Origin: Dimorphilus gyrociliatus
Lineage: Eukaryota; Animalia; Annelida
Assembly: GCA_904063045.1 (NCBI GenBank)
Contig: CAJFCJ010000029.1
Coordinates: 248,001-312,000 of the forward strand
DNA: 64,000 bases
Direction: 5' to 3'
The notes under the pieces are model-generated. The model was not told the DNA's origin, made no database searches, and worked only from the letters and a program-made list of their open reading frames with translations. The first letter of the stretch is position 1. Each line of letters starts with the position of its first letter. This document shows positions 54,496 to 55,965 of the stretch, piece by piece. Position numbers and translations under genes: made by a program.

Positions 54496-55965
54496 TTATA
54501 ATAGAGTTTGATTCGGGCCGTCGCATTCCATCTGACCGGCGGTCGTTTTTTCGACAACAGTCCCTTGGCAGGCTGTCTCTTCCATACCACCATTCTGTAG
54601 TCGGTTACAAACGCATTTTAGAAGAATCTTGCGGAAACGGACGTTGAAAAGGAAGTAGACTAGGAAATTAATGGACGAATTCAACATGACCATTGTGTTA
54701 CAGATACGAGAGAAGTAGAACTGAAAATAACCGCATTCGCGCCATTTGTTGTCTCTGAGAGACGTCCATAGTATTTGATTGACGAGTGCTGGAGTTTGGC
54801 AAATCGTGAAAATGAATACGACTATGATGAGTACCAAGGTTACGTTATCGTCTTGTTTTTGTCGCATCGTCACCATTTCTCGGCGCCGTCGCCTTAATTC
54901 ATTTAAAGCATTAACCAAGCGGATGTTAAGTACGGTCAGGACTAGTACCGGGAGGAGGAGAAGAAAAAACAAATAGAATACGTTCCTATAGATAATCTGG
55001 TAATAGGGTAGTTGGCCCAGGAATGACTTGTTTGCTTGAAATGCAGTTATGTTGGAACTGTCCACTGGTCCTAGTACGACGGTATTCTCGATGAAGTGAG
55101 GGAAGTTGTATAGAACCGAACAGATAATAATTAGCGCCAGTTGCTTCTTTGCCTGCTTAACCGTACAGAGGCGAGATGCCTGAGGGTGTCGGGGGCGTGA
55201 TTCGGAATCATTCCCTTTTTCCCACTCTTTTTTTATTGATATAAAATTTTCTTTTCGCCTCAAGATAAAGAGGCTTTATATAATTGAAAGAGATTTTTTT
55301 TAATAAACTACATACACACACGCTAATCTACGCCAAAATGGAAAATGAAATACTCTAATTGGTTCAAAGTTCAGACCTCTTATTGATTTCGCGTGCAGCA
55401 ATCACGTAACACTCGTTAGAAGGTTCTTCTAAAAGACAAGCCTGGTATTATATAATATTGCACATAAAGGGAATGAGTTTTTCCCCATTCTCTTTAATAA
55501 TTAACGAAGCGACCATTAAAAGAAAGTTGATATGAAATCTGAATCACGCCCCTGGTAAGGTCTACAGACGGCAATATATCGGTTCACTCCTACTAAAACG
55601 GTCGTCCAGATAGTTGCAGTCTGAGCGATGAATCCGAACGGTAGAAGGGAGACTTGGATGTAGGCATGACAATAATTTACATAAAATTTATTCAATTTAA
55701 GATAAGCGATAAGCGGCAAAACGGTGTAAAGAGGCAAGCCGAGGATTAAAAGGCAAGAGTCAATCACTGCCAAACCTTGCAATATGAACGTCGTTGACGT
55801 CTTGATCTTGTCACGTTTAAAAACGTAGTAGGCGACCGTATTACCGAATACGCCCAGGATGCATAAAGAACTCATAATTATCGTGTAGAGGATGAATTCG
55901 AAACGGGTACAACTATCTATCCTTAAATTCCGCTCTTGTTCCGATTCCGTTCCGTTCGCCCCCAT
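54496..55965 (-). CDS. FMRFamide-receptor-like class A peptide GPCR (365 aa, two coding exons)
   Basis: complement(join(54496..55179,55552..55965)). MGANGT start, GVFGN, LAVID, VNRYIAVCRPYQ|ASRLCTVKQAK, YNFPHF, FTICQTP, NSSINFLVY. The homology-implied junction is non-canonical (GG..AG); see findings. Confidence 0.85.
55192..55552. repeat. 12-bp perfect inverted repeat bracketing the GPCR intron (possible MITE/introner-like remnant)
   Basis: ggggcgtgattc at 55192-55203 and gaatcacgcccc at 55541-55552. Confidence 0.75.

What the first reader, a model, noticed from the sequence alone, without database searches (positions are those of the whole stretch)
55180..55552. Non-canonical GG-AG intron whose 5' splice site is paired by a 12-nt complement near its 3' end (introner/MITE-like)
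Seen: family homology requires RYIAVCRPYQ|ASRLCT, which makes the 372-nt intron GGGCGTGATTC...CCCTCAG. Sliding along the shared CAGG never gives GT-AG or GC-AG. The donor resembles GTGCGT with G at +2, and that G is matched by a perfect complement (GAATCACGCCCC, 55203-55192) ending 12 nt before the acceptor, which argues against a simple base-call error. The stem extends imperfectly to about 22 bp and puts the A of the Gln CAG codon opposite a C, the A-C mismatch preferred by ADAR. Retention hits a stop. The only canonical escape is GT at +5 with weak purine-rich acceptors, adding 13-25 aa to intracellular loop 2. Inference: a TIR element inserted at a CAG target duplication (Harbinger-like CWG) and spliced out precisely, or structure-assisted non-canonical splicing, possibly coupled to Q>R editing.
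Basis: partly seen in the sequence, partly recalled or inferred. Interest (0 to 1): 0.75.

Follow-up and report, generated by a model that had tools for sequence, protein, structure and literature searches.

The report
Hairpin-closed GG-AG intron family
A neuropeptide-receptor gene of a tiny marine worm is split by an intron that starts with GG instead of the near-universal GT, and it is one of at least 13 such introns in this genome that share the same 15-base inverted ends, a kind of intron not described in annelids.

Summary
A minus-strand FMRFamide-receptor-like GPCR gene has exon 1 at 55965-55552 and exon 2 at 55179-54496. The 372 nt between them (55551-55180) start with GG and end with AG. 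No slide gives GT-AG or GC-AG, and every in-frame canonical alternative deletes at least 6 or adds at least 13 residues. Eight homologues and Pfam 7tm_1 coordinates require the exact junction PYQ|ASRLCT.

The new result is that the 12-15 nt complement is a family signature. At least 13 unlinked introns in this 78-Mb genome carry GGGNCGTGATTCAGA...TCTGAATCACNNCCC, with unrelated interiors of 110 to about 2000 nt. All 13 lie between same-strand coding exons (UFD1, a DHHC enzyme, AHCY-like, iRhom, a Patched-like protein, two GPCRs and others). The exon always keeps the first G. The first AG past the 3' arm is in frame in 12 of 13 (P = 1.7e-5). The two arms covary, and the 5' arm is the better conserved. 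A relative keeps the 3' arm in UFD1.

No target-site duplication, autonomous element or variant U1 was found, and nothing supports editing.

The scan had already noted about 11 GG-AG hairpin introns elsewhere in this genome. Follow-up notes on three of them (ZDHHC21, dynein, AHCYL) report exact removal in RNA.

The parts
55552..55965 (-). GPCR exon 1 coding part, ATG 55965-55963 to CAG 55554-55552 (138 codons: N-terminus, TM1-TM3, NRY motif, ...RYIAVCRPYQ)
   Evidence: ORF. Pfam 7tm_1 positions 5-90. Alignment A2. Second HSP of P0003.
55180..55551 (-). 372-nt GG-AG intron (GGGCGTGATTC...CGACACCCTCAG)
   Evidence: Single copy as a whole in the genome.
55538..55552 (-). 5' arm GGGGCGTGATTCAGA. 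Its first G (55552) is the last exon base; the 5' splice site is AG|GGGCGU.
   Evidence: Inverted repeat I1. Zero mismatches to the family consensus GGGNCGTGATTCAGA.
55192..55206 (-). 3' arm TCCGAATCACGCCCC, pairing 14/15 with the 5' arm. Its 3' half is pyrimidine-rich.
55180..55191 (-). 12-nt tail CGACACCCTCAG ending in the first AG past the 3' arm (the acceptor)
   Evidence: Including it in the mRNA would add RHPQ, which no homologue has.
55546..55547 (-). Cryptic GT inside the 5' arm (C|GTGATT), buried in the helix. Its use would add 13-25 aa.
55516..55518 (-). In-frame TAA reached if the intron is retained
54496..55179 (-). GPCR exon 2 (227 codons plus stop: ASRLCTV..., TM4-TM7, C-terminal TLL)
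   Evidence: Pfam 7tm_1 positions 95-260; homologues; A2.

Best explanation
The 372 nt at 55551-55180 are a real intron of an intact FMRFamide-receptor-like GPCR gene, removed exactly between G55552 and G55179. It belongs to a small family (at least 13 in this genome, which earlier notes of this scan name as Dimorphilus gyrociliatus) of introns with a fixed anatomy.

Anatomy (shown):
- The exon ends in (A)G, and that G is the first base of a 15-nt 5' arm, GGGNCGTGATTCAGA.
- The intron therefore starts GGRCGU.
- An unrelated AT-rich interior follows.
- A 3' arm, TCTGAATCACNNCCC, pairs with the 5' arm.
- The intron ends at the first (once the second) AG 1-27 nt downstream.

Mechanism (inferred): removal by the major spliceosome.
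- The 5' site keeps the canonical contacts at -2, -1, +1, +5 and +6, and mostly R at +3. It has G at +2.
- The pyrimidine-rich 3' arm plus the next AG serves as the 3' splice region.
- The terminal helix brings the two sites together and buries the competing GT at +5/+6, which compensates for the poor +2 base.

Origin (inferred, weaker): an old burst of an inverted-repeat element, or of a transposing intron. Only the copies that work as introns in coding exons have kept their ends.
For: Junction:
- A2 shows no gap against 8 homologues.
- Pfam positions run on across the junction: 7tm_1 at about position 92|93 (inferred from the matched ranges), UFD1_N2 28|29, and DHHC 47-(Q)-49.
- The AHCY-like gene reads ...HVTAQ|TAVLIETL.
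- Canonical alternatives all change the length of a length-invariant loop.

Family:
- The shared 15-mer termini were found.
- All 13 members lie between long same-strand ORFs.
- With the donor fixed as G|GG, the first AG is in frame with a long ORF in 12 of 13, binomial 1.7e-5.
- Interiors are unrelated.

RNA-level constraint (12 members, before the AHCY-like one was added):
- 163 of 180 arm positions pair (154 Watson-Crick, 9 G.U).
- Own-arm pairing beats all 20,000 partner permutations, with double changes at positions 4, 5, 8, 14 and 15. The AHCY-like member adds one at position 7.
- The 5' arm shows 12 mismatches to consensus against 28 for the 3' arm, and is never the worse arm, although the search was strand-blind.
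- The helix is in the MFE fold of all 12.
- G1-G3 and G6 of the 5' arm are invariant.
- No GT version of the arm with a partner exists.

Other:
- A relative's genomic ORF (83% identical UFD1 exon) translates the 3' arm and tail identically (YESNLLD) while the sequence upstream differs.
- All U1 genes inspected have a canonical, or in one variant near-canonical, 5' end.
- The closest paralogues are single-exon across this site, so the intron is a gain.
- Earlier notes of the scan report exact removal in RNA for the ZDHHC21, dynein and AHCYL members. I did not verify these.
Against:
- A 5' splice site locked in a 15-bp helix is normally inhibitory for U1.
- G at +2 is normally very poorly spliced.
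- The branch point is not identified.
- Strong sequence conservation of the arms, not only of their pairing, is not explained by a helix-only role.
- The iRhom member has its first AG 27 nt past the arm, and using it would skip an SHRP motif that matches iRhom2.
- Transposon origin lacks a target-site duplication, an autonomous element and internal similarity.
Confidence: 0.7

Rival explanations
1. Structure-guided, non-spliceosomal (or specialised-machinery) excision, as proposed for euglenid nonconventional introns. The conserved terminal helix and arm sequence would be the recognition signal for another enzyme or RNP, and the GG/AG ends would be incidental.
For: - Arms are conserved in sequence over 15 nt, far beyond a normal 5' splice site.
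- The helix is present in every member.
- The family has no GT variant.
- Euglenid introns with terminal helices and unknown excision machinery are a precedent (PMC11282704).
Against: - The 5' site keeps the canonical -2A, -1G, +1G, +5G and +6U.
- The 3' end is always YAG at a variable distance from the helix, which is the behaviour of spliceosomal 3' site scanning.
- No RNA gene carrying the complement of the arm was found among the genome's exact matches.
Confidence: 0.1
2. The sequence is not removed. This GPCR copy is a disrupted allele or pseudogene carrying an inserted element.
For: - Retention gives a stop after 11 codons.
- No transcript-derived full-length protein of this gene was found in the protein collection.
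Against: - Both exons are intact over 138 and 227 codons, with the family's near-invariant residues.
- A close relative keeps exon 2 at 97% identity.
- Twelve other genes, including UFD1, AHCY-like and a DHHC enzyme, carry the same kind of element at positions that preserve frame and Pfam continuity. That cannot all be gene death.
Confidence: 0.07
3. Canonical splicing from the GT at +5 (55547) to a purine-rich AG at 55215, 55227 or 55251, giving a receptor with 13-25 extra residues in intracellular loop 2.
For: These pairs are in frame and free of stops. C|GTGATT is a fair donor.
Against: - Loop 2 length is invariant in 8 homologues.
- The acceptors lack a pyrimidine tract.
- At the other loci the same GT is out of frame with the first AG in most members (hand frame arithmetic from the phases and offsets), whereas G|GG is in frame in 13 of 13.
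- The GT lies inside the helix.
Confidence: 0.05
4. Sequencing or assembly error at +2 (true base T), or DNA-level excision of the element in expressing cells.
For: None found here. Neither can be formally excluded without reads.
Against: - The G at +2 pairs with a C in the 3' arm.
- It recurs at 13 loci and is invariant.
- The arm is kept in a relative.
- The element is present in the assembly of whole animals.
Confidence: 0.02

Closest known systems
MITE-derived non-canonical introns of the tunicate Fritillaria borealis (Henriet et al. 2019, as summarised in PMC11282704; see also PMC13326754)
   Same: - Animal nuclear introns with non-GT starts and terminal inverted repeats.
- They sit at lineage-specific positions.
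- They are removed exactly, by a U2-type spliceosome.
   Different: In Fritillaria:
- most introns are non-canonical (AG-AC, AG-AT);
- target-site duplications are present;
- the spliceosome itself (U2AF, snRNA modification) has changed.

Here:
- about 13-15 introns occur in a genome that otherwise reads as canonical;
- the ends are uniformly GG-AG;
- there is no target-site duplication;
- the U1 5' ends are canonical.
Euglenid nonconventional introns (PMC11282704; PMC12501133)
   Same: - Ends pair into a helix that brings the intron termini together.
- Interiors are unrelated and of very variable length.
- Only short terminal motifs are shared.
   Different: Euglenid borders are variable and lack a pyrimidine tract. 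They are excised as circles by an unknown, probably non-spliceosomal route, and their shared motif is 3 nt. Here a 15-nt consensus is shared, a canonical exon AG| and +5G/+6U are kept, and a YAG acceptor lies at a variable distance.
Introners / introner-like elements (Micromonas, fungi, dinoflagellates such as Amoebophrya and Polarella; PMC9860276, PMC7789003)
   Same: A family of related intron-generating sequences spread over unrelated genes. Some have inverted terminal repeats and non-canonical borders.
   Different: Introners are recognised by similarity along their whole length, occur in hundreds to thousands of copies, and usually show target-site duplications. Here only the 15-nt ends are shared, about 13 copies were found and there is no duplication. 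Introners were found in only two animal groups in a survey of 3,325 genomes (PMC9860276).
Sporadic GG-AG introns in human and Drosophila annotation (PMC4176328, PMC4528330, seen only in the result list, not read)
   Same: Same terminal dinucleotides.
   Different: From general knowledge, those are isolated cases. I did not open the papers to check whether they show a shared consensus or a terminal helix.

Membership tests
Canonical U2-type intron (GT-AG / GC-AG) | GT or GC at +1/+2 and AG at the 3' end, at a junction that keeps the protein intact | tested here: not met
   The intron starts GG. No slide gives GT or GC. All in-frame GT/GC-AG pairs delete 6 or more aa or add 1-32 aa, against a gap-free homologue alignment.
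Canonical U2-type intron (GT-AG / GC-AG) | Remaining 5' site contacts (-2A, -1G, +1G, +5G, +6U) and a YAG acceptor after a pyrimidine-rich stretch | tested here: met
   The site is CAG|GGGCGU. In the family, -1G, +1G and +5G are 13/13, +6U is 12/13 and -2A is 11/13. The acceptor is always YAG.
U12-type (minor) intron | 5' site [AG]TATCCTT and branch site TCCTTAAC 10-15 nt from the 3' end | tested here: not met
   The 5' end is GGGCGTGA. The nearest branch-like string, TTCCGAATC, matches 6/9 and is not the family consensus TCTGAATC.
Introner / MITE-derived intron | Terminal inverted repeats | tested here: met
   15-nt arms, 14/15 complementary here and 12-15 of 15 across the first 12 members.
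Introner / MITE-derived intron | Many copies similar along their length | tested here: not met
   The whole 372 nt has no other copy in the genome. There is no internal similarity among 12 members. Only the ends are shared.
Introner / MITE-derived intron | Target-site duplication of fixed length flanking the repeats | tested here: not met
   Flanks show no duplication. The arm-to-AG distances are 12, 2, 1, 15, 19, 27, 2, 2, 5, 8, 4, 3 and 2 nt, which fit no fixed length.
Introner / MITE-derived intron | Lineage-specific intron position | tested here: met
   The closest paralogues in the genome are single-exon across this site. One paralogue has a canonical GT-AG intron 8 codons upstream instead. 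Orthologous loci of other annelids could not be fetched.
   The CAG lies 9 nt away from the 3' arm here. Other members have different flanks. No inward-facing pair of arms kilobases apart appears among the 113 arm matches.
Euglenid-type nonconventional intron | Terminal helix juxtaposing the ends | tested here: met
Euglenid-type nonconventional intron | Variable non-canonical borders, no pyrimidine tract, excision as a full-length circle independent of the spliceosome | not testable with these tools
   Borders here are uniform GG-AG, which argues against membership. The excision product cannot be examined without RNA data.

The most novel reading that the evidence does not exclude
The 15-nt arms may be more than a clamp. 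They could be a sequence-specific splicing signal read by a dedicated factor (protein or RNA), defining a third, rare class of animal intron (GG-AG, hairpin-closed). That class would have persisted since before the split of D. gyrociliatus from a relative with 83% UFD1 identity. Its members would be the only surviving copies of an ancient intron-generating element.
Probability: 0.2. Interest if true: 0.85.

Novelty: new variant of a known kind. Interest (0 to 1): 0.72.

Why it matters
GT at the start of introns is among the most invariant signals in eukaryotic genes. Animals in which another dinucleotide is used systematically are so far essentially limited to some tunicates. Here a slowly evolving, otherwise conventional annelid genome carries a discrete, countable family of GG-AG introns with one shared terminal helix.

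That makes a clean natural experiment on several questions:
- how RNA structure can substitute for a splice-site base;
- how new introns arise in coding exons;
- why standard gene predictors, which allow only GT/GC-AG, will split or truncate these genes (UFD1, AHCY-like, iRhom, receptors).

The 13 loci with natural compensatory changes give ready-made test material for minigene assays.

Tried and rejected
1. Multi-copy MITE. BLAST of the 372 nt against the genome found only itself. Pairwise blastn of the 12 interiors found only chance AT-rich words.
2. Target-site duplication. Flanks were compared by eye and by arithmetic on tail lengths, and none fits. An 11-nt imperfect repeat here (GACCTTACCAG / GACACCCTCAG, 6/11) is not significant and has no counterpart at other loci.
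3. Autonomous element. No inward-facing pair of arms lies kilobases apart among the arm matches.
4. Variant U1 complementary to GGRCGU. Of the 13 U1 genes found, the 12 inspected have ACUUACCUG, or in one variant ACUUACUUG.
5. A trans RNA carrying the arm complement. The nine non-family exact 11-mer loci have no Rfam RNA gene.
6. GT versions of the arm. The two GGT variants have no partner arm and no coding context.
7. Stwintron or recursive splicing. The base after +1 is not the start of an internal GT intron.
8. 'GG...CC' excision exactly at the helix. It looked possible for four members until the downstream frame of L006 was corrected. It remains conceivable only for iRhom.
9. Wider searches for members. 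AGGGNNGTNATTCA gave 23 hits against 17 in the control and no new member.
The exon 1 ORF found no relative. The representative search for iRhom did not return the species' own protein.

The spliced (joined) protein model was never built or searched. Exons were searched separately, by reference.

Full report
**What is in the window**

The window is G000:C29:248001-312000 of a 78-Mb, 349-contig genome. Earlier notes of this scan name the organism as the miniature annelid Dimorphilus gyrociliatus. I did not identify the species independently.

On the minus strand lies a rhodopsin-type GPCR gene. Its best relatives are annelid FMRFamide-receptor-like proteins, 50-58% identical over exon 2.
- Exon 1 runs from ATG 55965-55963 to CAG 55554-55552.
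- Exon 2 runs from 55179 to the stop at 54498-54496.
- The 372 nt in between start GGGCGTGATTC and end CGACACCCTCAG.
- The predicted protein has 138 + 227 = 365 residues. Homologues have 347-398.

**Is the junction forced?**

Yes.
- Aligned separately with eight full-length homologues, exon 1 ends in the column of PYQ and exon 2 begins in the next column, A[SPT]RLCTV. There is no gap in a loop whose length is invariant (A2).
- Pfam 7tm_1 positions run on from exon 1 (to 90 at the penultimate residue of the fragment used) into exon 2 (95 at residue 3). That leaves exactly the residues present.
- An enumeration of all GT/GC...AG pairs that keep the frame shows that each deletes at least 6 residues of the NRYIAVCRPYQ block or adds residues (1-32 aa).
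- Retention stops after 11 codons.
- Sliding over the shared CAGG never produces GT or GC.

**The inverted repeat is a family signature**

- The arms 55552-55538 and 55206-55192 pair 14/15. They close the MFE and centroid structures.
- The exact 12-mer occurs only three times in the genome.
- The 11-mer core CGTGATTCAGA and the 15-mer GGGNCGTGATTCAGA with up to 2 mismatches revealed inverted pairs at other loci.
- I hold 13 members. Their lengths from arm to arm are 140, 173, 184, 187, 192, 198, 200, 208, 217, 311, 322, 361 and 2047 nt.
- Every one lies between two long ORFs on the same strand.
- Recognisable hosts are this GPCR, UFD1, a DHHC palmitoyltransferase, an aminergic GPCR, iRhom, a Patched/Dispatched-like protein and an AHCY-like protein. 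The rest have no Pfam match.
- Their interiors share nothing, and the 372 nt as a whole is single-copy.
- A second, differently weighted pattern found no further member. At this sensitivity the family has roughly 13-15 members.

**The splice rule**

In all 13 the exon keeps the first G of the arm, so the intron starts GG.
- With that donor, the first AG downstream of the 3' arm (1-27 nt away) is in frame with a long downstream ORF in 12 of 13. In UFD1 it is the second AG, 4 nt further on.
- By chance each would be in frame one time in three. The binomial probability is 1.7e-5.
- Where a domain model spans the site, the profile positions are contiguous: UFD1_N2 28|29 and DHHC 47-Q-49. In the AHCY-like gene the junction reads HVTAQ|TAVLIETL.
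- The 5' site is (A)G|GGRCGU. Here -1G, +1G, +2G and +5G are invariant, +6U is present in 12 of 13, -2A in 11 of 13 and +3 is a purine in 12 of 13.
- Compared with AG|GURAGU, only +2 and +4 deviate.
- The acceptor is always YAG.
- The 12 U1 genes inspected (of 13 found) have a canonical 5' end, or a one-base variant in one copy.
- This is the pattern of a spliceosomal intron with one bad base, not of an unrelated excision system.

**Evidence that the helix matters as RNA**

These counts cover the first 12 members; the AHCY-like member was added later.
- Of 180 arm positions, 154 are Watson-Crick, 9 are G.U, 4 are A.C and 13 are other mismatches.
- Each 5' arm pairs better with its own 3' arm than with the others'. 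None of 20,000 partner permutations reached the observed total.
- Double changes that keep pairing occur at positions 4, 5, 8, 14 and 15. The AHCY-like member adds one at position 7.
- The pattern search was blind to strand. Even so, the better-conserved arm is the 5' arm in the gene's orientation in 10 of 12, with two ties and never the reverse. The mismatch sums are 12 against 28.
- Part of this asymmetry is what sense-strand RNA pairing predicts: C to U changes in the 3' arm keep a G.U pair.
- The helix is in the MFE fold of all 12 members folded.
- No member has GT. The two GGT look-alikes in the genome have no partner arm.

**Age**

- The closest paralogues of this GPCR are single-exon across the site. 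One has a canonical GT-AG intron 8 codons upstream. This intron is therefore a gain.
- For UFD1, a relative's genomic ORF (P0032, 83% identical, from a 38-kb contig) reads ...EYFYESNLLDRHFACL.
- YESNLLD is exactly the translation of the D. gyrociliatus 3' arm and tail (TAT GAA TCA AAC CTC TTA GAC), while the residues before it differ.
- The arm is therefore kept in another lineage although it is non-coding.

**Origin**

Transposon origin is plausible by analogy but is not shown.
- There is no target-site duplication, and the tail lengths fit no fixed duplication.
- There is no autonomous element and no internal similarity.
- The genome paper reports only Mariner and MULE DNA transposons and does not mention non-canonical splicing (PMC7854359).
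- All recognisable copies sit in coding exons. The simplest explanation is survivorship: only copies that must be spliced keep their ends.

**Comparison with what is known**

- Inverted-repeat-bearing non-canonical introns are described in Fritillaria borealis, Amoebophrya and euglenids (PMC11282704; PMC7789003).
- Introners were found in only two animal groups (PMC9860276).
- My searches found no description of GG-AG hairpin introns, in annelids or elsewhere.
- Within this scan the phenomenon has been seen before on other DNA of the same genome. About 11 notes exist, and follow-up agents report exact removal in RNA for the ZDHHC21, dynein and AHCYL introns.
- I relocated the first and the last of those three (L016, L084) and show that they carry the same consensus as the present intron. 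I did not see the RNA evidence myself.

**Limits**

- No RNA and no raw reads were available for this locus.
- The branch point is unknown.
- The iRhom member is unresolved at its 3' end.
- The joined protein model was not built or searched. Exons were handled separately, by reference.

**Verdict**

Noticed in passing
L034:1255-1465 (G000:C19:1040254-1040465): The iRhom family member has no AG until 27 nt past the 3' arm. Using that AG is in frame but would skip codons reading EIYSHRPLI, and the SHRP there aligns with the SHRPYFTYW motif of human iRhom2. Either the motif is now intronic or this intron ends without AG.
   Followed up: partly
L035:928-1135 (G000:C16, UFD1): The UFD1 member skips the first AG (4 nt past the arm, out of frame) and uses the second, 4 nt further on. 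A relative's genomic ORF (P0032) translates the 3' arm and tail identically, so the non-coding arm is conserved between lineages.
   Followed up: partly
L084 (G000:C3:151300-154000, minus strand): The AHCY-like gene carries a 2,047-nt member of the same family (arms GGGACGAGATTCAAA / TGTGAATCTCGATCC). The class is therefore not limited to short introns.
   Followed up: partly
L041:1290-1560 (G000:C19:~125116-125386): A paralogous GPCR has an ordinary GT-AG intron inside the R codon of the NRY motif, 8 codons upstream of the GG-AG site of the window gene. The two are independent intron gains in an otherwise intronless family.
   Followed up: no
window:57467-57562 (minus strand): A tRNA gene of 94-96 nt lies 1.5 kb upstream of the GPCR (Rfam 58.7 bits; ARAGORN calls Thr-GGT with the anticodon at position 37). 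It is long enough to contain an intron.
   Followed up: no
L074 (G000:C3:2401789-2401954) and L075-L077 (C65, C133): Among the 13 U1 snRNA genes found are divergent copies. One has the 5' end AAACUUACUUGG, and three identical copies start GUACUUACCUGG with a degenerate 3' end (91 bits).
   Followed up: no
L058:861-1123 (G000:C19) and L057:506-1051 (G000:C16): Two further inverted pairs have family-like arms (15 and 14 of 15 pairs counting G.U) but no clear coding context. They could be UTR introns or decayed copies.
   Followed up: no
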